Positions 27,163-52,874 of a DNA stretch of 64,000 nucleotides are shown one piece after another (the first letter of the stretch is position 1; the number at the start of each line of letters is the position of its first letter). The notes under the pieces were generated by a model, which was given only the letters and a program-made list of their open reading frames with translations, had not been told where the DNA came from and made no database searches. The translations under genes were made by a program, and so were the position numbers. The DNA lies in assembly GCF_902652985.1 (NCBI RefSeq), contig NC_047017.1, positions 26,722,001-26,786,000 on the forward strand. The letters run 5' to 3'. This stretch comes from Pecten maximus (lineage: Eukaryota).

Positions 27163-27423
27163 TAAGGCAATGGGGGCAGTCATATTTCATTGAAACAGAC
27201 AGTAGATGGCGTATTGGTGAATGTGGTTACCAAATATGGTCATATTTCTCAGTCCAGTTCTTGATTGCAATAACCGAACATTATGTTCGTTTAAGGCAAT
27301 GGGGGCAGCCATATTTCATTGAAACAGACAGTAGATGGCGTATTGGTGAATGTGGTTACCAAATATGGTCATATTTCTCAGTCCAGTTCTTGATTGCAAT
27401 AACCGAACATTATGTTCGTTTAA
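27163..27423. repeat. 129-bp tandem duplication (2 copies, near identical)
   Basis: TAAGGCAATGGGGGCAG...TTATGTTCGTT starts at 27163 and again at 27292; one visible substitution. Confidence 0.95.
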
Positions 27424-28158: not shown

Positions 28159-29784
28159 TTATTTGCAGTACCATCGGCACGGATGCTGTCTGGGATTTGC
28201 AAACGTTTTCCGTTCTCCAAAACGGCATGTTCCTTCGGCGTGATTGAACCGTCCTCTGTAGAAATGACTAGTTGGTCTGTCGTCAAACTCGCCTTTGATA
28301 TTGCAACTTTCGAATGCTACAAGTCCGTCGTTTGGAAGTGAAAGTTGTGTGTATGCGGACACAAGGTGTAAACGAGCACTCATGGAGAAAGACATGTCCA
28401 TTCCGAAAGCGCTCGTTCCACACACAGCACCGGATATGTGACGCTTGGCCGTTCGTATAAGGTCATTATATGATACACCGGTAGGGGAAATGTATGAAGT
28501 ATTCATCGTCACATACGCATGTGACGGGTGATTGCTATTTGGTTCACAATAATGTAGCTCTCTTAACACAATATATGTAATTTTAGTTCCAAAATTCTTT
28601 TTTGAGCAAAGAGTTTGTAGCTCATCCGAGACTTTACTGCCTCTCCAAGGTGCTTGTATTGAGTACCAAATACTTGTTCTATGGTCAAACTTACAGATAC
28701 GTCTATGGAATGCCGCGGCAACCACTAAATTACCCATAGAGTGGGTAAATAGCATAGTGTTTGAAATCGGCCGACTCGAATTGCCGATCGCAAATTCACA
28801 AAACCATTCATGCGTTTTTGTATCGTCCCAACCACGGTCAATACTATTATACCACATAAATCTGCGTGTAAGGCATTGGGGAGTGTAATGTTCAATGAAG
28901 CTCCCCCAATAGATCGGTAAAGCTCCCATGTCTTTATAGCTGTCTGTTGGCGGTCGCTCTCCTGCTCCGTGAATGAATAAACAATGTTTCCTTCGTTTTG
29001 TCTTCAGGAGTGTATTTTCTGATTTTGTGATATAATCGTCAGTTGAAACGATACCTTCTTGTAGATGTGGTATATTCGGGTCCATAAAATTGCATTGTTC
29101 TAACTTTTGAGGTAGTTTGATAACGTCAGACGAACGCGAGTTCCATTTCGTTACCATGGCGCGTGTTCCGCCGTGGTCAATATAAACCAATCGCGATCCT
29201 TGGATACACAATACTATATGTCCTTCTGTTGTATAAAATTCGCTTCCTGTACAGGTAGAATCGTTTGCTTGTCTTCCAGTAAATAATACGGCCTGTTTCT
29301 GGAGAATGATTTTAATAACCGTTAGCCATTCGACTGATTCTGTGTCGTTTCGACAAAACCATTCCTCATCCGTACCATAAATCAGACCATATACTGCCGA
29401 ATTGTTGGCGTATATAAACCTGCTAATCATCTTATCGTGTGAAGATGAATCGGAAATACTTGTATGAGTTTCTTGATATGTAATAGTTTTAGCATTCGAG
29501 TTCCATTCAAAATCGATCATTATATGTGTACCTTCTGTTCCATCCTGTAACTGTTTTGATAACTTCAACTGCGCTTGGAAGAAATGTGAAAATATGTGTT
29601 GCGCAGTTTGGCTTGTAGCAGAGAAAGTATCGGTAGCGGATGTGACGTACGCAATATGGACACGGATGAATATAAATACTAGCGCTGCGAGCAACACAAC
29701 AGCCAGAGCCACTTTACAGTATGGTCGTCGAGGGGGGCGTCTCGTGTGTGTCTTCAGAAGTCTTGTTCTTTCCTGGTCCGCCAT
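28159..29784 (-). CDS. Uncharacterised type II membrane alpha/beta-hydrolase (lipase/esterase-like), 541 aa, single coding exon
   Basis: Uninterrupted ORF with N-terminal TM (VALAVVLLAALVFIFI), CLFIHGAG oxyanion segment, THSMG nucleophile elbow, APWRGS, NDG Asp and FNH His. Splice-acceptor-like CCTTTCAG ends at 29823, just 5' of the ATG. Paralog of 39945-41603. Confidence 0.88.
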   Translation of the reverse strand: MADQERTRLLKTHTRRPPRRPYCKVALAVVLLAALVFIFIRVHIAYVTSATDTFSATSQTAQHIFSHFFQAQLKLSKQLQDGTEGTHIMIDFEWNSNAKTITYQETHTSISDSSSHDKMISRFIYANNSAVYGLIYGTDEEWFCRNDTESVEWLTVIKIILQKQAVLFTGRQANDSTCTGSEFYTTEGHIVLCIQGSRLVYIDHGGTRAMVTKWNSRSSDVIKLPQKLEQCNFMDPNIPHLQEGIVSTDDYITKSENTLLKTKRRKHCLFIHGAGERPPTDSYKDMGALPIYWGSFIEHYTPQCLTRRFMWYNSIDRGWDDTKTHEWFCEFAIGNSSRPISNTMLFTHSMGNLVVAAAFHRRICKFDHRTSIWYSIQAPWRGSKVSDELQTLCSKKNFGTKITYIVLRELHYCEPNSNHPSHAYVTMNTSYISPTGVSYNDLIRTAKRHISGAVCGTSAFGMDMSFSMSARLHLVSAYTQLSLPNDGLVAFESCNIKGEFDDRPTSHFYRGRFNHAEGTCRFGERKTFANPRQHPCRWYCK

Positions 29785-32700
29785 TTTGTCTTCTTTCCTA
29801 CCAGACGTATTTCCACTGTGTCCTGAAAGGATATCAGATTGTTAAGAAGTGTAAAGTGAACATATACAATTCAATGTGATATTTCGCTGAGTTCGCGTGT
29901 TATGTTCAAATTAAAAGTCCTAATTCAGATGCGAAAAGAATGTCCCGTCTTTAAGTTTATTGATCATATGCTGATATCATTCCAGAAAATATCTATAGTC
30001 AAAAGACAAATAAGGAAGGTATGCGCGTAGAAGATTAAAAAAGAAAAAGCCATTGAGCCTTGGTCACCTTTATTCTTAAATAATACTGATTGTTGGTGTT
30101 TTTGTTTTCAAATTCAGAATTCAACTAATTTGACCAGTGCAACCTTGAAGCAGATCAACGTCATTCAGATGAACAAACTTTTCAGTCTGTTATCAAAGCA
30201 TGTCATCCTCCCAGTATCATAACCATGGGCTTATTTATTGTTTACACCTGTTACCTTGAAAGTAGGGCAAGGTCATAAGTTTAGACTGTATTTTATATAT
30301 TATAAACAAACATTAAAGTCAATACATAAATAAACAACAAGGACTCGAAATAAATATTACTTATCTAAATGTGTCTCCTTATCATCGTGAATTTGCGTAA
30401 GGACAGCATTGTTACTTAATTTGGGATGGTATCGTAAAACATGGAGGTAAGAAAATCAGGAAAGGAGGGTAAAAATGGGAGGGGCACCGAGAATAAGAAG
30501 AAAAAACTTAAGAAGGCCAAAACAAACATGAATAACTCAATAAATGGGATGAAAATCTTATTAGAATGTATTTGGTGGCATACTTAGGCTAAATATCTCA
30601 CTATTACAAACATTCACAGGTTTATAAATACATTTAACAAAGTCCATAATGTATGCTTACTTGCTTTATCACATCAATTTGAAACAAAGTATACTGATAG
30701 AAGAGAGAGATTACATAAAGTTTGGAGCGGGTATACTAAGAACATCGGCTGTTTCCCTGACAAGACGAGGGTTTATAGGGCCAGGACCAACAACTATTTT
30801 GCAGTCAAAGGGGTGTATTACGTCAAAAACATCCTGTCGGGATACATAACAATGTCAGAACGAAGGTGATTATGAGTGTTGTGCTGATCGATCTTCCACC
30901 ATTCCTTCCAATTGGTGTTATCATGGTGTTAAACTTTACACAAAAGTTTATTAAAACAACCACGTTTAATTTTACGAAGGGTATCTGTACACGTTTTATG
31001 GGCTTTTCTGAATTTCAGCGTGGCTTCAGACTTCTGTGACTATTCAGCTTTTCGGGGTTAATACTTTCGTTTACGAATCAATTTTCTTATTACATTATTC
31101 ATTTACAAAGCATAATTCTCTCTGATATTTATATCTTCACTTGGTATACGCGCACTTGCAATATTAAGTCCACAGCGTGTAAATTGGTCTCCACTTTTGT
31201 CGGTGTCATTGGTGTCAAGAGTACTGCCCAGGTAAATATTAAAAAGTCTATCGAGATATTCATCTAGGTCATAAACCATATTTACCTTTAAAACAAGATC
31301 TTAGGGGTTTCGAAAATGTAGGACTGTCATACACAGGACAATGAAATCGTATAGACTGGTCAATGATAGTCTCACTCACAAGACACATATTTACTAAAGA
31401 CGAATCTTTTACGCATTTACGCAGACTATATCTAGGAACGAGGGGGACGATAAGGGGGGGGGGGGGGGAGGTGTCCATTTTACTCTTATATTCGTCAAAA
31501 ATATATTAAAAATTATTATTACAGAAAAAAAGCGAAGTGTTTTCAAATTAGTCAAATTATGAAGTGTGAATAATGTAAAAGAACTCAATAAAACTGGTAA
31601 ATTATCCATTTAGCTTTTAGAAAAAGGGTAGAAAAAGTTAATAGTTAAATATTATTTTGTTAAACTAATGGGATGCATAAGCTTACAATATCATGTTGAA
31701 CACTCTCCGACCATGTAACTGTTTTATTGTATATCTATGCATTACCATGTTGTTATTTTCACTTATGGACCGGTAGATCATTGGAATAAATTGAACTTGA
31801 ACTTATAGACCTGACAACGCTTTGGGTAGGATTAAAGGTATGGCAAAAAAGGCAGCCGCAATAGGTCACTTTAGACTTCACTTCGTCTAAGGTGATCTGA
31901 AAATATAGGTTCATTGCACGTACTTGTATATGTAATAATTATGTATTTGAAACGTATCAGCATGTGTTGACAAGATATTTGAAAAATACTGACGTGATGA
32001 ATCAAAAGATATTTAAAATCCATGTACAAATGTAGATAATATAATGTAAAAATGTCATTTATCGTCATGTTTGCATAAAATATAGAACAATACGTGAGTC
32101 TTACAAAATTTAAAATCGAAAACGATATAAAGAATTAATCTGAACCGTGGTTTAATATCACTTATTCATAAACTGTTCAATGTAATCAGGATGCTACTTT
32201 TAAATTTTAAAAATAGCATACTTGTCAGTAATTGTATACGTTCACGTGACATACAGTTCCGAATTAATAATGTACAGGGTATCAATGCATGACAATAAAT
32301 ACTAAACGTCCCAATGCATTTTTCATCGGTGACTGATAAGAGGTACATACAATGTACATACGTACCCACGTATTGTACATGTAAAATTATACGCTAAATT
32401 TATACGATACATTTTTAAATCCGTGTACATTTTCAATTGTCAGTGTTTATTTACTTTTTATATTGCACTTTCATGAGATTCAGACAAATAATTTTACAGT
32501 AGCGTATTAAATCATACCTAATCATGAATATGTAACGTGTCTATGATTGAAAATGATATTTAAAATATATCAATATCTGTATAGAGAGATTTATCCGTTT
32601 ATCAGCAAATAAATAAGTAATGATCAGCAAAATACCACAGTTTATCTCCTGTAACATACGCAAAAGCATACCTACACTTAAGTTTTCATTCTGGGTTATA

Positions 32701-34582
32701 CGTAGGAACGCGCCAAGCTCGAGCTCCTGTGTACACGTCCCGCAGTATTACATAAAAAACTGTATTGAGTGGTGTGCTGGGCAGGTAAGGTAAACAATTG
32801 AATAAGATAGAAAATGACGTGAAAGCACGAAAACAAGGAAGTTTTTGAACAAGGAAAAAACTCATTGAACAAGGAAAAAACTCAGTTGACAATGTCCTGT
32901 TCTTTGTAGAGTATAAGTGTCAGAACAAATAATCGTTCGTTACACGCAAAGAAAATGATTCTAAGAAATCATAACCATTCCTCAAAAATACGGTTGATGC
33001 GTATTATTTCTATGAATTGAAACTTTTTTTGTGTAAACTTATAAAAACCAATCAGAAGGGTAGAGTCTAAGCAATTAAATCATATAATACATAACGCATA
33101 TATATGCTTGCGAGAAAAATATGCTCACCAAATAATTGCATAAGAAAAAATTGTTTCTAAACAATAGTGATTGTAAAAAAATGTATCTATTACGTAATGG
33201 AAGTTTATGTTCTTATTGAATAATTAATTAACATGTTTGTTAAAATCTGTATATTGTATGTCCATTAAAGTCACCTAAGAAGTTGTACGTTCAAGATTGA
33301 TAATTTTTGCAGATGCCCCTAATACGCCGCCGTACCTAGGATAATGACATAAAATACAATTTTCAAAACAAAAGAGATTCGATAGGCCTAAAAAGGTTGT
33401 TACACAACCGGTATGGGGTCTATTTGACCAGACAAACAGAAAACAACCCTCACCTCACGGTAGTTCTAAAACACCTTCTCCGGTAAATATACCGGTGAAA
33501 AATTCAGCTTATATGACACAGTATATAAATGAATCCCTATTTCTTCCTCAAATAACACCTACCTCCTGCTGAGACAAGTGTTAGTGTATAGAGAACACCC
33601 CCTGTAGTCCTGTGTCCTTGCCGGTATTGGATAGTGCCTCTGGAAAATGCATCTTACTCGCCAAGAAGAGTATTGTCCAATTAATTAGAGGCCAGAGCGC
33701 ACATCTTGTATAAATTTGTAAACTACCTGCAAGATAAGAAATAGCCTTTATACATGAACATGTACAGTATAAATACTTATATGATAATTGTATGTACTAC
33801 ACATAAGTACACATACGGTATGTGTAGGGATTTATTCATATCGTCAAAGCAAAATATGCTTTCCTTGTTTTTGTGATTTGTTTTTTAAGTAAAAACAGTT
33901 TAAAAAATCACTGCAAAAATGTAGGTTATATGTTTTATGGCTGAAATAAACTGTTGAAAGTTATTGCCTTGTTCACAGGGACTTGGCTTGGTCCACATAT
34001 GTATACATGTACCACAAGCATTTGCATCTAGTCTGTATTTATAGAAAATGTACAAGCCACTACTACTACTATAAAGTATCTATAGAAACATAAATACTAG
34101 CGCCTACTCCTACTATATTATGGGTGGCGGCTAGTTTTGTTTTTGTTTTTTTTAAACACTAACCAAAAAGAGACGCCTGTGTTTGTACAAATGATACCGT
34201 ATTTAACAAAAAAATATATAATAGGTATTGTATAGGGATAATGAAATTGGCAATGTATGTCAAGTCTCTGTGAGCCGTCTGACAATACATGGTATACCCT
34301 AGAACAAACATTGTCTTGTAAGTTAAAAGTATGTAAAGCTATTCGTTTATAACCTAAGTTTTCTCCAAACAAGTCTGTCGTCAATGGTCAAACAACATGC
34401 CTTTTTGTTGGAGATTACCGAACTCCTGTCGTTGTCTGGGAACCACGTCTGGGAACCAACAAAGTTTAACACTGACGCGCCTCCACAGTAGATACCATTT
34501 TAACAATAGGGGCTAATTGTAGTCATTAGGGTATTATGTGGGGTTAAATTACTGCACGCCTCCAGAGTAAAACCACTATAAC

Positions 34583-34785
34583 AATATGGGTTAAATATAT
34601 ATATATATATGTATAGTCGTCAGGATATTAATTGTTTAAAGAAATTAAGTAAGTGGAACTGTAATATATAATACATGTACCCCCACATGTAAATATGGGT
34701 TAAATATTTATATATATATATATATATGTATAGTCGTCAGGATATTAATTGTTTAAAGAAATTAAGTAAGTGGAACTGTAATATA
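34583..34785. repeat. ~110-bp local tandem duplication containing (TA)n
   Basis: AATATGGGTTAAATAT(TA)nGTATAGTCGTCAGGATATTAATTG...GGAACTGTAATATA occurs twice. Confidence 0.85.
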
Positions 34786-37700
34786 CAGCTCCCCCCGGAT
34801 AGAAAGAAATAATAATGAAATATTACGATCACTGTTTTGTCTAAAATTATACACTAAATCACTAAATGTTAGAATTCATGTTAGAATTCAAAAATAACCG
34901 CTTGCACATTTTCCTGAAGAAACTACCTAAATTATTTAGAAAAATGAGTTTATGATACATATCATAATATCGATGTCGAACACAACAAGCTATGTATATA
35001 TATTGTATATATCAGCCAAGGCCGATCAGTTATTTTTAAATTTACTATATCAACCTATGATAGACCCCTATATTTCTTAAGATCTCTTCGTTGTCCGCCC
35101 AACGTTGAGATTTTGACTGCTAACCCTATTGTTATTGAGGCGCGGGGCGGGTGTGTGACGGTAGTCACTGATGGGGTGGGGACATACACACAAGGAGGAC
35201 GTATTCATTATGAACACACCTCGTTAGATTTACAACATGATTCCTGGTAATTATCCTATAACAAAATAATCGAATCACATTACAACAAAATCATTAAATA
35301 ACTTCAAAAACAAGTTACGGTGTACAATCTCTAACAGACAACACTACAGCATATGTGTGTACTATTATACACACGTCATGTCACTGCCGTACATGTGTAA
35401 TGCATGCACACGTAGAGTCAATGGTCTCTATATTAGATCCCACAACGTGTTGGAACAGAAATTAATAAAACATAAACACTTACCCCATATTCTCCATCTA
35501 GGAACCCGTGTCGGATGTTTGGGCTTTACTCTGTGTACAGTCGTGCATGGTTACGTCGACCGGTCTGACCTCAATATAGGACGAACACAAGTGAAATCGT
35601 ACGATTCGACCGATATATGATGTTGCAAACCTGAATAACCCGTCGTTTATCTTCAAGTACTCTTACTTGAACATTTTGGTTGTCAAAGGCGTAAATTAAT
35701 AGCGATGTGTAATTATCACATGACTTTTTTTGAGCGTGCCGTGTTTATCACACCTCGTGATTGTAACTAAGGCTAGGTAAAGCGAGAGTTACACATTTTA
35801 CACGCCACAAGCACTGACAACACTGTGACTGTGTAAAATAAGACAGGACCGACCTGGAAACAATAAAACACCTGGGGCGGGGAAATTACACTCGTAACCA
35901 ATGACGATTCACGAATTTAGCCATTTTCCCTTAGGCTGTTTACTGTCATATTGTCATAGTGTAGGATCAGACACAATTATGATTACGGTTTATTTTAGTT
36001 AGATATGTTTTACCTAAACTACATGTATGTTCTGACTTTGATTACAGTTGTAATATACATGTATAGTGAAGCACTAGATTACATTGTCCTACGATTTAAT
36101 TTTACTTCGATACAACACTGCATATGGTTATCATGTTTATCCAGGATTTATTTGAAAAAATTAGCGTGGCATACGAATTAACGTGGCAGGTTTTGGAAAT
36201 CATCGTTATAACTTTAAATCGTAGCTTTCGCGATATTTGAACGTATGAAAAATTCAAGTCCGTGTCAAAACTAATGACATATATTCTTTAATCTCCAATT
36301 TAACACATAAACAAATACGTCATCGGACTGATATTCAAAAATGCAAAAAATCTTAAGCATACCTATATTAAACTTATTATAAAAACGTTGACACTACAAA
36401 AGAAATTCTGGTACGTGTAGCGATTCCTATGACGAGACAACTAAGAAACATTCATTAAAAATCCAATGCATGGACACCGGTTCTATATTTCAATTCTTTA
36501 TCAAAATTTGGAAATACATAATCGTCCAGAAAAAAATACAATAAACATTATGATATGAAATATTCTAAGAAGCATATTAATATATATATATATATATATA
36601 TATATTAGGTTGAAATAAATTTTATTTTTCTATAATTTCTATATTTTTCGGATAATATAAATTACATAATTCAAATTCAAACAATTTGAATATATATGCC
36701 TTGTTATAAAAAAATATATGCAATACTAGCCAACACCAGAAATCCGTAATAAACGTGTTATATGTGTTATACACTGTTCAAACAGCTAGTCGATACAATT
36801 GCTTACTGGCGAACTTGACATTTCATTTAGCGAGAAGTATGTCCATGCGTTAACAAAATGACATATTTGTCATTTTATGTGTAAGGAGATGTTTATGTCG
36901 TTTGGCCTGTCATATTCTCATCTTTGAATTTTTGTTTAGTGTTAAGGAAGGACAACTCTAACGACATTGTCGACATACGATCTCTTACTGCATATCGCCA
37001 TGACGACGGGGCATTGTCGTAACATAACCGCGAGTGACATAGCGACACAAATGTTAACTCAATGTTCAGTTTAAAACGTGCGGGATAACATCACTTAAAG
37101 AGATTAGACACCGATACCATTTCCAATAAAGACGAAGAGCTTTTGTTCTACGGTTACAAGTGTAAAGAATACACATGTGTGTTTATTTCATTATGTCAGG
37201 TCACGAAATTCCTCATTCAAAACACTTGCATACATGTGAAGTAGATGTCACCCGTGTCCTGATACATAAATAGTTTTTAATCTGCACGTTTTTGTTTGCT
37301 GATTGACCAATCAGTATGTAAAATATACCCTACATCGCTCCACAGACAATAAGCGTAGTCATATAGGCAGTAAGACAGTGTCACTTCCTCATACCTTTCA
37401 TCTGACGTATATCTCCTGGTCGTATGTCGATTGAAAGGAGCAAGCACATATTTTTACAGGAATAGGAGACTTACAATTACAACCATTAGCCAGTTGTTCC
37501 AAAACTTAAAGCGTTATAAAGATGTTAACGCAACATTCAGAATTTAAAAAAAAAATGCTGAAAAATACAAACAAAAACAAAAAACAAATATGCTTGTGAA
37601 TTAATTCGTTTAAATATTTTTACACAATATTTAAAACATTAAATTAGTCACCCGTTTAACTAAATCATGATGCATATTTAGTGATGTTTTATGATTTTCT

Positions 37701-38021
37701 TCCTGGATGTTTCTTTGCTTTTCAAATCTATTTACGGTGATTAAAATAGCCCTGTTTAAGGAAGTTTTAAAATCAAGTGATCACGTTGGAGTTTCCGTAT
37801 ATATATTCTTCCTTGTTAATACAGAAACAAGACGTTTGATCAAAATTGTCATTTCAGAAAGTCCTGATGTGCCAGCAGAGAGAGTCCCTGCTCATCATAT
37901 GGGTTTAGGTAAGAAAACATTTATTGGAGTTGAAGTTGATATGTCACATCGTCGTAAGACTTCTATGGGTGGTACTAAGCATTTGCTGTACATACCCATA
38001 CTACAACTAACGACGATTTAA

Positions 38022-39850
38022 AGTCACAGTACATCACTACAGCTGTATATGTAGTCACAGTACATCACAATATCTGTGTGTGCGGTCACAGTACATCACT
38101 ACATCTGTATATATAGTCACAGTACATCACAATATCTGTGTGTGCGGTCACAGTACATCACTACATCTGTATATTTAGTCACAGTACATCACAATATCTG
38201 TGTGTGCGGTCACATTATATCACTACATCTGTATATATGTCGTCACAGTACATCACTACATCTGTATATATAGTCACAGTACATCACAACATTTGTATAT
38301 TTAGTCACAGTTCATCACTACATCTGTATATGAAGTCACAGTACATCACAACATCTGTATATTTAGTCACAGTACATCACAATATCTGTGTGTGCGGTCA
38401 CATTACATCACAACATCTGTATATGTCGTCACAGTACATCACAATATCTGTGTGTGCGGTCACATTACATCACAACATCTGTATATTTAGTCACAGTACA
38501 TCACAATATCTGTATATGTATTCACAGTACATCACTACATCTGTATATTTAGTCACAGTACATCACTACATCTGTGTGTGTGGTCACAGTACATCACTAC
38601 ATCTGTATTAGTCACATTACATCACTACATCTGTATATATAGTCACAGTACATCACTACATCTGTATATTTAGTCACAGCACATCACACTATCTGTATAT
38701 ATAGTCACAGCACATCACTACATCTGTATATGTAGTCACAGTACATCACTACAGCTGTATATTTAGTCACAGTACATCACAACATCTGTATATTTAGTCA
38801 CAGTTCATCACTACATCTGTATATAAAGTCACAGTACATCACAACATCTGTATATTTAGTCACAGTACATCACAATATCTGTATATGTATTCACAGTACA
38901 TCACTACATCTGTATATTTAGTCACAGTACATCACTACATCTGTGTGTGTGTGGTCACAGTACATCACTACATCTGTATTAGTCACAGTACATCCCTACA
39001 TCTGTATATTTAGTCACAGCACATCACACTATCTGTGTGTGCGGTCACATTATATCACAACATCTGTATATATAGTCACAGTACATCACTACATCTGTAT
39101 ATGTCGTCACAGTACATCACAATATCTGTGTGTGTGGTCACAGTACATCCCTACATCTGTATATATAGTCGGAGTACATCACAACATTTGTAAATGTAGT
39201 CACAGTACATCACAACAGCTGTATATGTATTCACAAAACATCATAACATCTGTGTGTGTGGTCACAGTACATCACTACATCTGTATATATAGTCACAGTA
39301 CATCACTACATCTGTATATGTATTCACAGTACATCACTACATCTGTGTGTGTGGTCACAGTACATCACTACATCTGTATATTTAGTCACAGCACATCACA
39401 CTATCTGTGTGTGCGGTCACATTACATCACTACATCTGTATATATAGTCACAGTACATCACTACATCTGTATATGTAGTCACAGTACATCACTACAGCTG
39501 TATATATAGTCACAGTACATCACTACATCTGTGTGTGTGGTCACAGTATATCACAACATTTGTATATTTAGTCACAGTTCATCACTACATCTGTATATAA
39601 AGTCACAGTACATCACAACATCTGTATATTTAGTCATAGTACATCACAATATCTGTATATGTATTCACAGTACATCACTACATCTGTATATGTCGTCACA
39701 AAACATCACAATATCTGTATATGTATTCACAGTACATCACTACATCCGTATATGTCGTCACAAAACATCACTACATAATTATGTATATTTAGTCACAGTA
39801 CATCACAACATCTGTGTGTGTGGTCACAGTACATCAAAACATCTGTATTT
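38022..39850. repeat. 31-bp minisatellite, ~59 copies (consensus AGTCACAGTACATCACTACATCTGTATATNT)
   Basis: A period of 31 is read directly (38022, 38053, ...). Variants are concentrated at a few positions. It generates the spurious repetitive ORFs in the track. Confidence 0.97.
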
Positions 39851-39944
39851 ATTTCATACACACGTTCAAAATGATTTTTACTTGCCTGATAATCTTCCTC
39901 TTATTCGTTTCTATTTCACCGTTTCAGAACTATCACACCTCGAT

Positions 39945-41603
39945 ATGGTGTACACATCAGAAACCGAAAGCCTTTTAGGGCCACAAAACACAAAATACAG
40001 ACACCGGAAGCGGAGCATCATCGTGATAACCTTGATTACGATTGTAGTGCTGATTGGAATTACTACTGGATTAGCTTACGGCTACATCTATTGGAAAAAG
40101 AACATAAAAAATGACAAGAAAGTTCATTTAAAACACGTTTTACCGAGTTCTTTTGGCGTTATGTTCAAAATTCAGACTGAAAATTCCTCTGATTCTGTGA
40201 ACGGAAATGTCAAAGAGATCAAGTGGGAAAATGAGCCAAAAACGATCAGATACCATCAGAAAACAGAGCAAATGATTTCCAACGAAAGTATCTTAACGGA
40301 CGTCATCATAATTAACAACAAAGCCGCAGTTTCGTATAAGCTTGGAAATCAGACTTGCTGGATGGACCCAGGGGATTTAAATGTCTTCAAATGGTTTTCA
40401 ATTTTACGACTTATCATGGATTCTATTCAGTCTCATTACACCGAAGAACGTTGTCCTGGACGTATGTGGACAGTACCATACGATGAGCAGAGCGTGTATA
40501 TCTGTATCACCCGCCAGCAAATAGCGTACATCAGGTATGACGACAAAGTCGCAAAATCGCAAGAGTGGCTGGTCCCATCAAGATCGTCCATCAAGATGCC
40601 CAAAGACACACCTAAATGTGAGTCGATGAACCTTGAAATGCCTTCACTACGCATGACTCAACAAACTTATGAACAAAACACTTCTGATTCCATCCGAAAG
40701 AAATCGGAGGATATACAAAACATAGGAATAGTTTATGAACCTCGGGGACAATCAGACGTATTTACAAGAAGCACAAGGCCAGACTGTTTGTTTGTGCACG
40801 GGGTAGGTGTGTCGACACCAAAGACAGGATTCAAAAGTGTCACTAGCCTTGATTACTGGGGTCACATTGAGAGAAACACCCCACAATGTTCATCACACAG
40901 GTTTATTCAGTTCAACACAGTCGACAATGGTTGGGACTCTACATTACTGCACCAGATGTTTTGTGAGTTTGCCACAGGCTCCAACTTGGGGGGAAGCATT
41001 TCCAACAAGATCATATTTTCACATTCCATGGGAAACAACATCATCGCGGCCGCGCTCCACCGCAAGGTTTGTACTTTCGATAAACAATCAAGTGAATGGT
41101 TCTCCGTGTCTGCGCCTTGGCGTGGAAGCAAGGTGGCAGACAAACTCCAAAACCTTTGTGCTGGTCACTTTGGTCCGAGCCACCACATATCCCATAATAT
41201 ATTGAGATTGATATTAGGACACACAAAGTTCTGCACAAAGGCCGGGAAAATGTCGCCAGCTTATAAAACACTGCAACCTGCATACAAGTCCACGACAGGC
41301 GTCTCCTTTGACGATCTGATATCTGTGGCTAGTCTCTATGTTAACGGGGCACTGTGTGGTACGTCTCCATGGGGTATGGGTCTAAACATCGCCTTCAGTG
41401 GGGCTTTGGATTTCGTCCAGGGTTTCTCACATCTTGAGACGCCTGATGACGGCGTCGTGGCACTAAGCAGCTGTGATGTCCTTGGCAGAAAATTCCAAAA
41501 ATCATGGAAGGACAAATTTTACATGGCATCTGTTAACCATCTTGAGAGTTCGACTTCATATGGCTGTCCTACGCCTCTCTGTTCATGGTATAAACACTTA
41601 TAG
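39945..41603 (+). CDS. Uncharacterised type II membrane alpha/beta-hydrolase (lipase/esterase-like), 552 aa, single coding exon
   Basis: The true start is probably MVYTSETESLL at 39945, after acceptor-like GTTTCAG at 39921-39927; the 690-aa track ORF is extended by the minisatellite. TM IIVITLITIVVLIGITTGLAYGYIYW, then CLFVHGVG, SHSMG, APWRGS, DDG and VNH. Confidence 0.88.
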   Translation: MVYTSETESLLGPQNTKYRHRKRSIIVITLITIVVLIGITTGLAYGYIYWKKNIKNDKKVHLKHVLPSSFGVMFKIQTENSSDSVNGNVKEIKWENEPKTIRYHQKTEQMISNESILTDVIIINNKAAVSYKLGNQTCWMDPGDLNVFKWFSILRLIMDSIQSHYTEERCPGRMWTVPYDEQSVYICITRQQIAYIRYDDKVAKSQEWLVPSRSSIKMPKDTPKCESMNLEMPSLRMTQQTYEQNTSDSIRKKSEDIQNIGIVYEPRGQSDVFTRSTRPDCLFVHGVGVSTPKTGFKSVTSLDYWGHIERNTPQCSSHRFIQFNTVDNGWDSTLLHQMFCEFATGSNLGGSISNKIIFSHSMGNNIIAAALHRKVCTFDKQSSEWFSVSAPWRGSKVADKLQNLCAGHFGPSHHISHNILRLILGHTKFCTKAGKMSPAYKTLQPAYKSTTGVSFDDLISVASLYVNGALCGTSPWGMGLNIAFSGALDFVQGFSHLETPDDGVVALSSCDVLGRKFQKSWKDKFYMASVNHLESSTSYGCPTPLCSWYKHL

Positions 41604-44600
41604 AGCAATCGTGGATTTTGTGGATTAAACATTCTTTCTTCATTCATTCTTTTGACAAATATGTATGAATATGAATGTAGCTTAAACATTACCAGTTTAT
41701 TTACAATACGCAATGGCTATTTTTTCGCTGCACCGCTAATATGACGTCGTTTTTTTTGTTTTTTGTTTTGATCTTTGATTCTCCAACTTGGTCTTTGTCA
41801 TAATAATAGGGGCGCAATCGGACAAAATGTCACTTACAAATGATGATATCGGATGTATATAACAAGTACATTAAGGAAATTATTTATCACCTGCAAATAA
41901 ACGTAGGAAATATTTGTTATCAATGTTTTAATAGAATATATTAATTTTCAACTTATTAATGATATATGAATTGTCATTGTTCTTAAAGTCGGTTCATCTT
42001 TATAGTAAAACAAAAATTCTTGAATATTAATACATGTGACAATATTAAGATTCTTTTTTTTGATGAATGAATGATTAACTTTGTAAGATGGCTTTGTTCT
42101 TTAATGTATATGCTTTGTTATCCAATAGTTGTAAAAGTTTAACCTGTCGCTGGGTTGGTTGTAGTTCACACCACGATACTAAAAATTTCTTTAAGAAGAT
42201 GTTGATTTAAAATCGTATTATCGTTTTCCACAGAAGAAATGGATGGCACTGAAATAAAAATATTGTAAATTGTGTGTATTGTAAATTATAAAATGGCAAA
42301 CGGGGCTTTTTGACAACTTTTGATGTTCCTGTAGTGATGTAAATAAAAAGAATTATGTTAATTATATTTGTAGCATCGTGCAATAATTCGATATTCTTCT
42401 CATATTCTTTTCATTAATGACACGTTGTGTTATTTCTCATTATTCTTAGATTATGTATTACCCAGTAACCACTTTTAAATATTTACAAATGAAATATTTT
42501 TAACGTGTAATTTAAATGATGTTGGTAATAAAATACAAAAACAATGTATCAGATAATCTTGATTATGTTTGCACTTATTGATATCGTGTGTGTCATGTTT
42601 ACTAATAAAATGCAATATTCAAACGCAGCAATGATCAAAGCATCTGTATCATAGATGTTTACGTCTAGGAACAGGTGAAATATAAAAAAAAAACTTGTAC
42701 CCGAAAATGCAAAAAGCAATGCAGTATTGAGAACCTTTAGCTAACATTGAAAAAAACTGTATTGACATGACATATAACATAGACAATTCTGATTGAATAT
42801 ACATGTATACATTTTGTTTAAGTGTCACATACACCGGTAGGTACATGTATATTGTTTTGTCGGGAATTATTATCAGATTAACTGTATTAGCATATGTATT
42901 GCGTCAACCTTGCTTTTATGTGCATAAAACATTTACTTGTAGAATACATCGCATTAAATGTATATAATGTTTATTCATTATCCAGTTTTACAATTATTTA
43001 CTATTATGAATAAAGGTTTGATTAATAAACCAAATATATTTCGTTTTCAAATATCCTTAACGCACCCTTTTGTTAGCTGGATATTGAAATGACGCATATT
43101 TATAGTTTTACTCTACTATATAACATTTCACTGATACTCTTTTTTCAATTAACCATTTATTTTGCTATTCAATTTCATTGGTGTATCTATGATCTACTTT
43201 GTATTATTGTGATCGAAAGTACAAAAGAAAATGCGGCGTTGTTTAAAAGGCTAATTTTTACAGAGATAGAAAAAGTCCTCTTAAAATTTAACTATCTGTT
43301 CATGTTTATACTTTTAGCTTGTTTAGTAATAATAATGTTAAACATGTCATTACGGCGAAGACTAAATTATGTGTGTATCGTTATGCATCAATTGAGAACA
43401 CTGAGCTGCGTGTTACTACACTTCCGTATATACGTGTATATGTATAAACACCATTATACAATTATCCACCAGTTTGTAGGTGAATACATTGGTTTATCAA
43501 CCTGAGAAACTGATATTTCCCGAGGCTGTCGTTTAAGACTCTTTGTCGCAGCTTGAAAAGCGTTTCGTTTTTAGCTAATGACTGTATATGATATCGATGT
43601 CAGAATGGATTGTAAAGGACCAATTAATCGTCGTAACGAAAACAACGAATCCTTTGTAACACTTTAGATGGTCGGGTGGCACAGTGACGACTACGTGGGA
43701 TTTCCCTCTACTGTAAGAACCCTGGAGCGCTTCAATCCAGGTTAACCAGAAAGATTAGTATAAGTTGATATAACTTGTTTCACAATTGTTGTAAAATAAA
43801 TCAAGTTTACTTTTTACATTTGTAATGTGAACCTTTCTTACTGATCTCACCCTCGGCATCAAATTTAGTAGAAAGTCATCTAAATGAGCAGCTGACAGGG
43901 TGTCAGTTGGCTCTCTTTTCCCTGTAGAAAGCATCGGAATAATTTTTCTGAGACGTCTGCCTGTCATCTTGTCGACTAATTTCAACAGCAACCGCCGATC
44001 TAGAAGCGCGCTGATTGATTTTGTTTTATTTGACGTCGTGATTTTTTTTTTTTTTTTATAATTTTGACGTCATGGAATGAGGGAAGTCCCAGGTTACTAC
44101 ATTATGTTAAGAACTCGTGTTCTTGGATTGCTATATCAACCCGGGGCGCTGATTTGTGGTTGACAAAATGTTTGAGTCAAGTTAGAATGTTTAGAATATT
44201 CATCAGGAAAAGGGGAAAACAATATCATTTTATAACGTTCTATACGTACACTTGAGTCATACAAACGTGTTTGTCGAATGGATTGTATACTGATACAATA
44301 ACAAGGAAATATTAACGAATGGTCAAAAATAAATACAGAAAAGTCGTTATTTCAAAATTGTTTTTAAGCGATGCCATATCATATTCCCTCCAAAGGCCGG
44401 CAGCCATACAAAACGGAGAATTCATGTAGATTTACTTTTATGTAACACCACTACGTTAAAAGATTTATCAATAAATTCACACCATTAAACCTTCTTGTTT
44501 CTCTCCCTTTTTTTTTATTAAATTGTAATTATGGAGTAGCAATCATCTGCTTTGTTAAGTCTTCATAAAATGTGGTATTGCTGCTTGAAAGATGCCGCAT

Positions 44601-51107: not shown

Positions 51108-52874
51108 ATGGTTGCGGACAAAGAAAATTCAGAGGTTAGAAACAGTCATTTCAATAAGCCTAAGAACAACACACGTATATCAAGTAGTAAGAAAAGGAGA
51201 GCGAGAGACAGAAATCATGTTCTTAAGGTCATTACAATACCGGGATACCAACACAGAGATCACAGTGTGCTTACGGAGAAGTCGAAGTCTGAGACAGACG
51301 TAACTACTGTAGATGTTTCGTCCAATTCTGATGATAGAAGCAATGTGGTTGTAAACAATGATAGTGGAAGAACTATTGAAAACAAAGCAGAAAGGAAACA
51401 GTTGAAAATTCAAGTTGATTTGAGGTTAGAGCTTTGTCAGGAAACACACGTTTCGGTTGCAACTGACAACGAAACCGACACAAGTGAAAATGAACGAGAC
51501 CAATTGACAAGCGATAACAAAAGAGACACAGAGTCCTCCAACTCATGTAACAAGAAATCGATTATTCGAAAAGATTCATCGTTAGATGTGATAACGGAAG
51601 AGAAGGAAACAGGTAACAGTCAAAATGTCGTCAAGAAAGAATCTCTCCGACGGGAAATAACGTTTGACGAGCTAGTGTTAGATGATAGCGAAATACTTAG
51701 AACAAGTACTCCAACTGGAAATTCTTTTGCACAGTCTCGCATAAGACCAAAGACTTGTTCGTCAGTTTCCAAACGTAAAGAATCATTTCGATCCTTCGCT
51801 AGACCGAAATCTTCCCTCACTCCAAGGACTCCTAAACGATCTGACGACAGTCATTTCCGTAACTGTAACAGTCGTTCATCTCTATCGCGTTCTGACCGTC
51901 CATCAACAGCAAATACAAGTATGTCGAATTCTCCCCGAAGGAGTATTGAAACGAGGAGATCCTTCAAGATAACAAAGGAAGATCTAGAACATTCTCTTCC
52001 TAAGAAAAGTTTCTTTAACTGTCATGATAAAGTTCTAAAGGATGCCGGGTTTGAGGTGGAAGAGGTCTCACCAGCTGGTGCAAAAAAGCGACAATTTATG
52101 CAGCTTTTACAGCAAAGAAATAAAGATCGAATAGAAAGAGACAAAGCTAGAAAAATGCCTCCTCCCAAGGTGCTTGGATTGCTAGATCTGTATGAACTGG
52201 AATGTAGCACAGATGAAAATTCTACATCTGTAGTTAGTTTTGAGGATCAACAATCGAAAAACACGAGTAGCAAAAACAAGAAAAATTCTAAATCTACATC
52301 TAAGAAAAAGGGTGAGGACGAGGAAGATATTCGTGTGGATTATCAACTATTGTTGATATATCTTAAATACATAAAAGCGAACCCCGAGGAATTTCTTCAG
52401 TATCACGAAAGACAGGCGGCTTCAGTGAACCTGATACACGTTCGACATGGAGATTCGCTTGTGAAATTAGGGAGTATATTCCAGCGTGGCCGACACGGAA
52501 TATCCACAGAGAGCATCCTTGTGAAAGCTGTGCATGACATTCGGCCGCGGTTCACAGATCCGGGACAGTGGGCCTCTGCTAACAAGGAGAAAGAACTGTT
52601 AGCTCTTACCTCTACCAAAAAGGAAAACAGTATTCCTACAAAGCAGGAACCAACAAAGAAGGAAGCTACCAATAATCAAGAAGAGCCAAAAACAGAATAT
52701 GAGAGGATAAAATTAAAACTAGATGGATGGCTAAAAACAGTGACAACAGCACAACTGAATAAGGCAAAGGAGTTAGCTCTTAGAGAGCTAGGGCAAGAGG
52801 ATGTATCCCTTTCTAGATGGTGGATTTCGCTAAAGTCATGTAATTATATTAGGCAAAGAACTCATAAAACTTAA
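51108..52874 (+). CDS. Uncharacterised 588-aa S/K/R/E-rich, largely disordered protein, single coding exon
   Basis: Long uninterrupted ORF in AT-rich DNA with a low-complexity body, helical islands (YQLLLIYLKYIK, IKLKLDGWLK) and terminal WWISLKSCNYIR. Confidence 0.8.
   Translation: MVADKENSEVRNSHFNKPKNNTRISSSKKRRARDRNHVLKVITIPGYQHRDHSVLTEKSKSETDVTTVDVSSNSDDRSNVVVNNDSGRTIENKAERKQLKIQVDLRLELCQETHVSVATDNETDTSENERDQLTSDNKRDTESSNSCNKKSIIRKDSSLDVITEEKETGNSQNVVKKESLRREITFDELVLDDSEILRTSTPTGNSFAQSRIRPKTCSSVSKRKESFRSFARPKSSLTPRTPKRSDDSHFRNCNSRSSLSRSDRPSTANTSMSNSPRRSIETRRSFKITKEDLEHSLPKKSFFNCHDKVLKDAGFEVEEVSPAGAKKRQFMQLLQQRNKDRIERDKARKMPPPKVLGLLDLYELECSTDENSTSVVSFEDQQSKNTSSKNKKNSKSTSKKKGEDEEDIRVDYQLLLIYLKYIKANPEEFLQYHERQAASVNLIHVRHGDSLVKLGSIFQRGRHGISTESILVKAVHDIRPRFTDPGQWASANKEKELLALTSTKKENSIPTKQEPTKKEATNNQEEPKTEYERIKLKLDGWLKTVTTAQLNKAKELALRELGQEDVSLSRWWISLKSCNYIRQRTHKT

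What the first reader, a model, noticed from the sequence alone, without database searches (positions are those of the whole stretch)
28159..41603. Divergent pair of intron-free serine-hydrolase genes resembling an oomycete/protist family: possible horizontal acquisition or patchily retained family
Seen: two oppositely oriented 541/552-aa ORFs without coding introns share an ordered motif series. It runs CLFxHGxG, YWG, TPQC, NxxDxGWD, FCEFA, [TS]HSMGN, AAAxHRxxCxF, W..xAPWRGSKVxDxLQxLC, GAxCGTS, [ND]DGxVAxxSC, FY...NH. Established: HG, x-H-S-x-G, DG and late His is the alpha/beta-hydrolase Ser-Asp-His arrangement. Inference from memory, unverified: the same string, including the Cys spacing of the N-terminal domain, characterises an expanded uncharacterised family in Phytophthora-type oomycetes and other protists, and I do not recognise it from model animals. 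The copies are strongly diverged yet both intact, which implies an old duplication under purifying selection.
Basis: partly seen in the sequence, partly recalled or inferred. Interest (0 to 1): 0.85.

Follow-up and report, generated by a model that had tools for sequence, protein, structure and literature searches.

The report
Protist-type lipase gene pair in scallop
Two head-to-head scallop genes encode membrane-anchored enzymes that join a lipid-binding barrel to a bacterial-type lipase; their only relatives found outside bivalves are in oomycetes and other protists, so they may be an old gene transfer into animals.

Summary
The window is Pecten maximus. Gene A (28159-29784, minus, 541 aa) and gene B (39945-41603, plus, 552 aa) are 33% identical and carry every listed motif.

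Gene B is transcribed and spliced. RNA contigs from four studies join 37908 to 39928 across a GT..AG intron filled by a 31-bp minisatellite.

Each protein has a short cytosolic tail, a type II anchor, a LolA-fold domain, a disordered linker and a Cys-rich alpha/beta-hydrolase. The hydrolase is most like Pseudomonas and Burkholderia family I lipases, and its HG, S, D and H positions are nearly invariant in 147 homologues. No Pfam family reaches its cut-off.

A search of 1.84 billion proteins found 684 relatives. Named ones are scallops and freshwater mussels, or protists: Saprolegniales oomycetes, Heterolobosea, an amoebozoan and a euglenid.

Bivalve sequences form one clade (100/97). Paralogue lineages predate the pectinid genera. 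dN/dS is 0.20 overall and 0.10 in the hydrolase domain.

Ancient transfer from a protist is the more economical origin. Patchy retention is not excluded, because the tree backbone is weak and unrooted. The enzyme's activity is inferred, not shown.

The parts
28159..29784 (-). Gene A coding sequence, 541 aa, one ORF including the stop. Oxyanion H272-G273 at 28966-28971, nucleophile S349 at 28738-28740, acid D486 at 28327-28329, base H515 at 28240-28242.
   Evidence: own-genome match to the family profile E 2e-217
29785..29824 (-). 38-nt 5' UTR part of gene A's coding exon (29785-29822), preceded by a pyrimidine tract and the AG acceptor (29823-29824).
   Evidence: Sequence. Homology with a pectinid orthologue transcript (L017/L018) stops at 29819.
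35487..35605 (-). Candidate non-coding exon 1 of gene A. It would imply a 5' intron of about 5.7 kb.
   Evidence: 70% identity over 119 nt to the 5' UTR of orthologue transcript L017, E 3e-10. Inferred only; not tested with P. maximus RNA.
37822..37908 (+). Gene B exon 1 (at least this much). It holds an in-frame ATG at 37899 and is followed by a GTAAG donor.
   Evidence: RNA contigs of 4 runs, pattern match, sequence, NCBI model P0001
37909..39927 (+). Gene B intron, 2019 nt, GT..AG.
   Evidence: The joint 37908 to 39928 appears in contigs of 4 runs from 4 studies.
38022..39848 (.). 31-bp minisatellite, about 59 copies, 82% matches, filling the intron. It is the source of the spurious repeat ORFs at 38138-38611 and 38943-39509, and of the GTG-extended ORF that starts at 39531.
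39928..41900 (+). Gene B exon 2. The CDS runs from the ATG at 39945 to the stop ending at 41603 (552 aa). The transcript continues beyond 41900.
40017..40085 (+). Gene B type II signal anchor (residues 25-47). Before it lie a basic cytosolic tail and an ExxxLL motif at residues 6-11.
   Evidence: Hydropathy and motif scan; predicted helix 18-53; motif conserved in A-type and B-type bivalve proteins
40122..40619 (+). Gene B N-terminal all-beta domain (residues 60-225), LolA-superfamily fold, with three conserved Cys.
   Evidence: Model pLDDT 92.3; VioE Z 10.8, many LolA at Z 8-9.8, EPDR1 Z 8.9; Foldseek gives the same families
40620..40766 (+). Low-confidence linker, probably disordered (residues 226-274).
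   Evidence: pLDDT below 50; length varies in the alignment
40767..41600 (+). Gene B lipase-like alpha/beta-hydrolase domain (residues 275-552). H285-G286 at 40797-40802, S361 at 41025-41027, D502 at 41448-41450, H532 at 41538-41540. Nine conserved Cys.

Best explanation
The two ORFs are real, expressed paralogous genes of the great scallop. They belong to a bivalve multigene family with at least five intact copies and two decayed copies in this genome.

Each protein is a single-pass type II membrane protein. Its luminal or extracellular part joins a LolA-fold hydrophobic-ligand-binding half-barrel to a disulfide-rich lipase-type alpha/beta-hydrolase. The hydrolase has an HG oxyanion motif, a [S/T]HSMG nucleophile elbow, an NDGxV acid and a late NH histidine.

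The most likely activity is hydrolysis or acyl transfer on a lipid ester (triacylglycerol, phospholipid or sterol ester). The N-domain would capture or present the acyl chains. In the A and B subfamilies, a tail ExxxL[LI] motif would send the enzyme to the endo-lysosomal or digestive compartment.

The family is unnamed and Pfam-less. It is widespread in protists: Saprolegniales oomycetes, Heterolobosea, Amoebozoa and euglenids. Among named animals it was seen only in Pectinidae and Unionida.

The most economical origin is one ancient acquisition from a protist by an early bivalve, followed by duplication under purifying selection.

Shown: gene structure, transcription and splicing of gene B, fold, residue conservation, family distribution among named hits, bivalve monophyly and purifying selection.
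Inferred: enzymatic activity, substrate, localisation and the horizontal origin.

Rough odds: lipase-type active serine hydrolase 0.85; horizontal origin 0.5-0.6.
For: Genes and expression:
- The ORFs are 33% identical.
- They sit in a 53-Mb chromosome scaffold among C1q genes.
- The GT..AG joint 37908 to 39928 appears in RNA contigs of 4 studies.
- An orthologue of gene A is transcribed in a related pectinid, and homology stops at the predicted acceptor.
- The genome holds five intact single-ORF copies plus one broken copy and one remnant.

Fold:
- The full model has pLDDT 84.7.
- C-domain best matches are P. aeruginosa lipase 1ex9 (Z 17.4, Foldseek E 6e-8), Burkholderia and Proteus lipases, Legionella PlaB and LPLA2.
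- The family profile's best PDB sequence hit is also 1ex9 (E 0.038). It aligns APxxGS, the CG cysteine and NDGxV with LipA's catalytic D229 region.
- The N-domain matches VioE, LolA, LolB, EPDR1 and LprG.
- HG, S, D and H are at least 90% conserved in 147 sequences.
- Type II anchor, 14-16 luminal Cys and N-glycosylation sequons.

Distribution:
- 684 representatives at E<=1e-3.
- Named members are listed.
- The nearest Atlas clusters are all Oomycota.
- N-domain homology to protists by hhalign is 94% and 96%.

Tree and selection:
- The bivalve clade has support 100/97 and 98.
- dN/dS is 0.20 overall and 0.10 in the C-domain.
- Composition is host-like, GC3 0.38-0.48.
Against: - No enzymatic, localisation or tissue data exist.
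- The PDB sequence link to family I lipases is marginal (E 0.038). The N-domain Foldseek E-values are only about 1e-3.
- Only about 35 of the 150 listed hits could be given an organism.
- Nine to ten members of the 'bivalve' clade are unnamed transcripts or metagenome contigs (P0009, P0010, P0012, P0013, P0015, P0016, P0018, P0043, P0179). They could come from other animals.
- The tree backbone is weak and unrooted. The nearest group is a short, C-domain-only protist clade (96/91), which lacks the N-domain that bivalves share with other protists.
- An amoebozoan member means an ancestor of amoebae and animals could have had the gene.
- Host-like composition gives no independent sign of foreign origin.
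Confidence: 0.6

Rival explanations
1. The family is an ancient eukaryotic one. It was inherited vertically into bivalves and lost in nearly all other animals and opisthokonts (differential loss, no transfer).
For: The family spans at least three eukaryotic supergroups, including Amoebozoa. Bivalves are monophyletic and not nested inside any one named protist lineage. Gene composition is host-like. Unnamed members of the bivalve clade might be other invertebrates.
Against: No named protein from any non-bivalve animal, fungus or choanoflagellate appeared in an exhaustive HMMER search of 1.84 billion representatives, nor in three word-indexed searches. Oysters, mussels and clams with NCBI annotation are missing too, so dozens of independent losses would be needed. 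In all five intact P. maximus copies the family match lies in one open frame, in an intron-rich genome.
Confidence: 0.3
2. The proteins are catalytically dead lipid-binding or receptor-like pseudoenzymes that merely keep the hydrolase fold.
For: No activity data exist. The first position of the elbow is S/T/A rather than the canonical G. The N-terminal LolA-fold domain alone could bind lipid.
Against: All four catalytic elements are at least 90% conserved across 147 sequences. The hydrolase domain is under the strongest constraint, dN/dS 0.10. xHSMG elbows occur in lipases described as true lipases in the literature (AHSMG lipases, PMC9408867).
Confidence: 0.07
3. The genes are divergent members of a known animal lipase-like family (LCAT/LPLA2, PGAP1 or DUF676/FAM135).
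For: Sub-threshold Pfam LCAT hits of 19.7 and 14.7 bits against a cut-off of 21. LPLA2 4x90 matches at Z 14.9. Atlas look-alikes include PGAP1/LCAT/DUF676 clusters.
Against: No Pfam model passes its cut-off in 12 members tested. Bacterial family I lipases are the better structural and sequence match. The strongest relatives are protist proteins at E 1e-40 to 1e-83.
Confidence: 0.02
4. The genes are contamination or an assembly artefact from a protist living in or on the scallop.
For: Protist-like relatives and a single-exon CDS.
Against: The genes lie on a chromosome-scale scaffold beside animal C1q genes. Gene B has a spliced GT..AG intron carrying a host minisatellite. There are paralogues and pseudogenes on two chromosomes. 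Orthologues lie on large scaffolds of four other pectinid or unionid genomes.
Confidence: 0.01

Closest known systems
Bacterial family I.1/I.2 'true' lipases (Pseudomonas aeruginosa LipA 1ex9, Burkholderia cepacia/glumae and Proteus mirabilis lipases)
   Same: Best structural match (Z 17.4, rmsd 3.2 over 213 residues; Foldseek E 6e-8) and best PDB sequence-profile match. The order and spacing of HG, xHSxG, APxxGS, NDGxV and His are the same. The cysteines aligned near the acid residue suggest the same disulfide as LipA C183-C235; this is an inference.
   Different: Sequence similarity is marginal (E 0.038, 16% identity). The elbow is [S/T/A]HSMG, not GHS[HQ]G. There are nine conserved Cys instead of two. 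The protein is eukaryotic, membrane-anchored and fused to a LolA-fold domain. No Lif-type foldase partner is known, and the Ca2+ site was not examined.
Uncharacterised oomycete/protist proteins (e.g. Saprolegnia diclina SDRG_13397, Aphanomyces astaci H257_04898, Thraustotheca clavata THRCLA_12010, Willaertia magna ABK040_001005, Acrasis kona AKO1_007852)
   Same: Same family by sequence (E 1e-40 to 1e-83 against the bivalve profile). They have the same two-domain plan with the same conserved Cys and catalytic motifs. Some oomycete members also start with an anchor-like segment.
   Different: C-domain identity is only 20-35%. The N-domain is recognisable only by profile-profile comparison. Many protist members have a cleavable-looking signal peptide or lack the N-domain altogether. 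None has been characterised.
LolA superfamily (LolA/LolB, VioE, LprG, ependymin-related protein EPDR1)
   Same: The N-domain adopts the open half-barrel with a central helix: Z 8-10.8, with 140-152 of 168 residues aligned. Like this protein, EPDR1 is a luminal animal protein with this fold; that EPDR1 binds lipid is recalled knowledge, not tested here.
   Different: There is no detectable sequence similarity (5-11% identity). Here the domain is fused to an enzyme. Ligand binding is untested.
LCAT / lysosomal phospholipase A2 (PF02450) and PGAP1/DUF676
   Same: Same clan and fold (4x90 Z 14.9). There are weak Pfam hits around the nucleophile elbow. LPLA2 shows that a lysosomal lipase of this general kind works in animals.
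   Different: Scores are below the Pfam cut-offs. The family lacks the LCAT cap and membrane-binding insertions. The match is worse than to bacterial family I lipases.
Fungal and yeast AHSMG-pentapeptide lipases (ThaL of Trichoderma harzianum, TaLipA; PMC9408867)
   Same: They have an xHSMG elbow, an ENDGLV acid motif, Ser-to-Asp spacing of 141 residues and a lid modelled on 1ex9.
   Different: ThaL is 340 aa with no signal peptide or anchor and no LolA-fold domain. Homology to the scallop family was not tested because no sequence was on hand.

Membership tests
Alpha/beta-hydrolase fold serine hydrolases | Canonical alpha/beta-hydrolase core fold | tested here: met
   AlphaFold model pLDDT above 90 over most of residues 275-552. 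Hundreds of hydrolase matches, top Z 17.4.
Alpha/beta-hydrolase fold serine hydrolases | Nucleophile elbow (small-x-S-x-small), acid and histidine in that order, plus an oxyanion HG | tested here: met
   H285-G286, H360-S361-x-G363, D502-G503 and N531-H532 are nearly invariant in 147 sequences. They are present in both window proteins. Their contact in 3D was not checked, because no coordinates were available.
Alpha/beta-hydrolase fold serine hydrolases | Measured hydrolytic or acyltransferase activity | not testable with these tools
   Needs recombinant protein.
Bacterial lipase family I.1/I.2 | Significant sequence similarity to LipA-type lipases over the domain | tested here: inconclusive
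   Best PDB profile hit is 1ex9, but at E 0.038 and covering only 126 profile positions. It is the best structural hit at Z 17.4.
Bacterial lipase family I.1/I.2 | G-H-S-[HQ]-G pentapeptide | tested here: not met
   The elbow is SHSMG in gene B and THSMG in gene A, and [S/T/A/G]HS[M/L/Q]G across the family.
LCAT/LPLA2 (Pfam PF02450) | Score at or above the Pfam gathering cut-off (21 bits) | tested here: not met
   19.7 bits for gene B and 14.7 bits for gene A, each covering only 43-70 residues around the elbow.
PGAP1 (PF07819) / DUF676 (PF05057) | Score at or above the Pfam gathering cut-off | tested here: not met
   No hit in the window proteins. One oomycete member scores 14.1 bits against a cut-off of 24.3.
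LolA superfamily (N-terminal domain) | Open antiparallel beta half-barrel with an internal helix, as in LolA, LolB and VioE | tested here: met
   Domain model pLDDT 92.3. The top 15 VIA hits are VioE, LolA, EPDR1 and LprG at Z 8-10.8, covering most of the domain. Foldseek lists the same families at E about 1e-3.
LolA superfamily (N-terminal domain) | Binding of acyl chains or another hydrophobic ligand in the cavity | not testable with these tools
   Inference from the fold only.
Horizontally acquired gene in an animal | Stable integration in the host genome, with expression | tested here: met
   Chromosome scaffold, spliced intron, RNA contigs from 4 studies, paralogues and orthologues.
Horizontally acquired gene in an animal | Absence from other Metazoa and close outgroups | tested here: inconclusive
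   All named animal hits are Pectinidae or Unionida.
Horizontally acquired gene in an animal | Recipient sequences nested inside the donor group in a supported, rooted tree | tested here: inconclusive
   The bivalve clade has support 100/97, and its neighbours on all sides are protists. The tree is unrooted and no named donor lineage is sister.

The most novel reading that the evidence does not exclude
A phagotrophic protist's secreted or lysosomal 'LolA-barrel plus lipase' enzyme was transferred, eukaryote to eukaryote, into an early autobranch bivalve. There it gained a type II anchor with a dileucine sorting tail and a host 5' intron. It then radiated into at least three paralogue lineages that now serve intracellular lipid digestion. 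This would be a rare, ancient protist-to-animal gene transfer that founded a new animal enzyme family.
Probability: 0.4. Interest if true: 0.75.

Novelty: new variant of a known kind. Interest (0 to 1): 0.6.

Why it matters
Well-supported transfers from eukaryotic microbes into animals are few. Most bivalve candidates proposed so far are bacterial.

Here the candidate is an old, expressed, multi-copy family under purifying selection. Its domain combination, a LolA-fold lipid binder fused to a family-I-type lipase, has no Pfam model and no characterised member in any organism.

If the origin is confirmed, it would show that filter-feeding bivalves took a digestive enzyme from the kind of organisms they eat or are infected by.

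Whatever the origin, the work defines a large unnamed protist family (684 or more cluster representatives, expanded in fish- and crayfish-pathogenic Saprolegniales). It also gives a testable catalytic model for it.

Tried and rejected
- Pfam and NCBIfam scans of the two proteins and ten relatives gave only sub-threshold LCAT, PGAP1 or Abhydrolase_6 hits.
- A PDB sequence search with the bivalve-only profile found nothing relevant.
- Two of the three word-indexed homologue searches added little. One search found only more pectinid paralogues. One search, using the 147-sequence alignment, returned the same bivalve set.
- Pattern scans of bacterial/archaeal genomes and of viral contigs found no relative. 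One attempt failed because the alignment was too diverse. These are weak negatives.
- A JGI metagenome scan gave six contigs at 23-41% identity over the best aligned segment, protist-like in divergence and without organism names.
- Attempts to name the source of the unnamed bivalve-clade sequences failed. Text searches for SRR22671415/16/20, SRR27895283, SRR21524757 and SAMN14422906/BUSC20 found nothing relevant.
- An N-domain-only HMM recovers bivalves only. The apparent full-length HMMER matches to oomycetes therefore overstated N-domain similarity, and profile-profile comparison was needed.
- An AU test did not reject a tree in which all pectinid paralogues form one clade (p 0.246). The claim that the A/B split predates the scallop/unionid divergence therefore rests only on 91/81 branch support.
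- Synteny in Mizuhopecten is only partial. The A orthologue and a B-like gene are divergently oriented on one scaffold, but 26 kb apart with other genes between them.
- Literature searches found no description of this family or of its transfer.
The 561-aa form was used only as the database protein P0001.
Full report
**What is in the window**

The window is from Pecten maximus. A database protein identical to gene B is 'uncharacterized protein LOC117323747 [Pecten maximus]', on a 53-Mb contig.

Gene A is a 541-aa ORF on the minus strand, 28159..29784. Gene B's mechanical ORF runs from a GTG at 39531, but only because an upstream tandem repeat is open in that frame. From the ATG at 39945 to 41603 it encodes 552 aa.

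The two proteins are 33% identical over 493 columns, E 8e-86. The one correction is that four residues, not three, lie between FY and NH.

**Gene structure and expression**

Both ATGs are preceded by a pyrimidine tract and an AG. For gene A the AG is at 29823-29824, 38 nt before the ATG. For gene B it is at 39926-39927.

For gene B the splice was seen directly. Contigs from four runs in four studies join 37908 to 39928 across 2019 nt with GT..AG ends. They start at 37822 or later and run on past 41900.

Exon 1 ends ATGGGTTTAG|GTAAG. Its ATG at 37899 is in frame, which is where the 561-aa NCBI model starts. The coding sequence is therefore single-exon, except possibly for three codons and one base.

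The intron is almost entirely a 31-bp minisatellite of about 59 copies, 38022..39848.

For gene A I could not lay P. maximus reads. Two transcript contigs of an orthologue from a related pectinid are 76% identical in nucleotides. They match the window only from 29819 downstream, that is, from the predicted acceptor. Part of their 5' UTR matches 35487..35605 on the minus strand, E 3e-10. The two genes therefore appear to be head-to-head, with first exons about 2.2 kb apart.

Contamination is excluded by four facts: the chromosome context among C1q genes, the host-type intron, the paralogues, and orthologues on large scaffolds of other bivalves.

**The family in this genome and in bivalves**

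The P. maximus genome holds five intact copies in which the family match lies in one open frame. Two are in the window, two more are on the same chromosome and one is on another. There is also one copy broken by a stop and a short remnant 3.2-3.6 kb before the window start.

Named relatives are from:
- Argopecten, Mizuhopecten and Ylistrum (several paralogues each);
- the freshwater mussels Potamilus and Sinanodonta.

A careful ML tree of the hydrolase domain (56 rows) gives one bivalve clade with support 100/97. It has three pectinid paralogue lineages, each containing several genera at 99-100 support. The unionids fall with the B lineage (91/81). However, an AU test does not reject a pectinid-only clade (p 0.246).

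dN/dS between gene A and its pectinid orthologue is 0.20 overall. It is 0.34 in the N-terminal half and 0.10 in the hydrolase domain, with dS 0.84. An old duplication under purifying selection is supported.

**What the protein is**

With a 147-sequence alignment, AlphaFold gives pLDDT 84.7. The predicted parts of gene B are:
- a helix at residues 18-53; hydropathy puts the anchor at 25-47, behind a basic tail;
- an all-beta domain at 60-225;
- a low-confidence linker at 226-274;
- an alpha/beta-hydrolase domain at 275-552.

The hydrolase domain is closest to P. aeruginosa lipase 1ex9: Z 17.4, rmsd 3.2 over 213 residues, Foldseek E 6e-8. Next come Burkholderia and Proteus lipases, BlEst2, Legionella PlaB and lysosomal phospholipase A2.

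The family-wide profile also has 1ex9 as its best PDB sequence hit. The hit is marginal (E 0.038), but it aligns APxxGS, the CG cysteine and NDGxV onto the LipA stretch that contains D229 and C235.

H285-G286, H360-S361-x-G363, D502-G503 and N531-H532, plus nine cysteines, are at least 90% conserved in the 147 sequences.

Folded alone, the N-domain has pLDDT 92.3. It matches the LolA superfamily: VioE at Z 10.8, a dozen LolA structures at Z 8-9.8, mouse EPDR1 at Z 8.9, and LprG. Foldseek lists the same families.

The A and B subfamilies carry ExxxL[LI] in the tail. The third pectinid subfamily has a very short tail without it.

My reading is a luminal or extracellular lipid-ester hydrolase or acyltransferase whose LolA-type domain handles the acyl chains. 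In the A and B lineages it would probably be sorted to the endo-lysosomal or digestive compartment. Activity, substrate and location are inferences.

**Relatives outside bivalves**

An exhaustive HMMER search of 1.84 billion cluster representatives found 684 proteins at E<=1e-3 and 241 at E<=1e-30.

Those that could be named, apart from bivalves, are:
- Saprolegniales oomycetes: Thraustotheca, Saprolegnia and Aphanomyces, the last with several paralogues;
- Heterolobosea: Acrasis, Willaertia and Percolomonas;
- an amoebozoan, Luapelamoeba;
- a euglenid, Jenningsia;
- an MMETSP marine protist.

The three nearest ESM Atlas clusters to the whole protein are all Oomycota, scoring 0.99, 0.94 and 0.94 with 64, 159 and 71 members.

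About 35 of the listed hits align over both domains, and many have only the hydrolase domain. An N-domain-only HMM finds bivalves alone. Profile-profile comparison links the bivalve N-domain to a heterolobosean-type group (94%, E 1e-7), and that group to the oomycetes (96%). The three cysteines align in these comparisons. The direct bivalve-oomycete comparison is weak at 43%.

No Pfam family reaches its cut-off in any of 12 members tested. Pattern scans found no bacterial or viral copy.

What was verified is Saprolegniales, not Phytophthora.

**Origin**

No named protein from any other animal, fungus or choanoflagellate surfaced. Annotated oysters, mussels and clams are absent as well.

In the tree, bivalves are one clade surrounded by protist clades. 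Their nearest neighbours (96/91) are short, hydrolase-only proteins that include the euglenid, not the oomycetes. Gene composition is host-like, as expected after long residence.

A single ancient acquisition from a protist needs far fewer events than vertical descent with dozens of losses, and the single-exon CDS fits it. The case is still incomplete:
- nine to ten members of the bivalve clade are unnamed transcripts or contigs of one host-associated-looking metagenome;
- the tree is unrooted;
- an amoebozoan member keeps vertical descent possible.

I put horizontal origin at 0.5-0.6 and differential loss at about 0.3.

**Comparison with what is known, and verdict**

The enzyme works like a bacterial family I lipase, but it fails that family's pentapeptide test and its sequence link is marginal. 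It is not a member of LCAT, PGAP1 or DUF676 by Pfam criteria.

The xHSMG elbow and NDGLV acid motif recall the fungal and yeast AHSMG lipases (PMC9408867). Kinship with those was not tested.

Literature searches found nothing on this family or on its transfer into bivalves.

The finding is a real and fairly unusual one. It is an unnamed two-domain lipase family, shared between protists and, among named sources, only a few bivalve lineages in animals. It has a sound catalytic model but an unresolved evolutionary story.

Noticed in passing
window 38022-39848: A 31-bp minisatellite (about 59 copies, 82% matches, strong C-over-G skew) fills the 5' intron of gene B. It creates long spurious ORFs (38138-38611, 38943-39509) and extends gene B's ORF upstream to 39531.
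   Followed up: partly
window 51108-52874 (+): A 588-aa single-ORF gene candidate, rich in Ser, Lys and Glu, with no Pfam hit. Its only other match in the genome is a partial, stop-containing copy on the same chromosome (C3:32439517-32440077). It is not found next to the Mizuhopecten orthologues.
   Followed up: partly
window 27163-27423: A 129-bp unit repeated twice at 99% identity, about 0.7 kb downstream of gene A's stop codon.
   Followed up: no
Together they show an ordinary animal gene and repeat context around the pair.
   Followed up: partly
G000:C3:26718437-26718849 (L009/L010) and C3:26179807-26181287 (L007/L008): Two decayed family members: a short remnant with stops 3.2-3.6 kb before the window start, and a copy split by a TAA next to an intact paralogue. 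They indicate birth-and-death turnover in the family.
   Followed up: partly
L020:9596-11224 (Mizuhopecten yessoensis NEDP02005595.1): The annotated A orthologue LOC110440616 (409 aa) looks like a truncated model. Gene A's full 541 aa align there at 66% identity in one frame.
   Followed up: partly
P0036 (Acrasis kona KAL0478962.1), residues 579-645: This heterolobosean family member carries a C-terminal BolA domain (PF01722, E 6e-13). It may be a gene-model fusion or a real fusion.
   Followed up: no
L011 and L012 (ENA ERZ23487774, sample SAMN14422906): Two different bivalve-clade family members lie as single ORFs on gene-poor 5.6-7.5 kb contigs of one 'metagenome'. This is probably host DNA of an unidentified animal.
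   Followed up: partly
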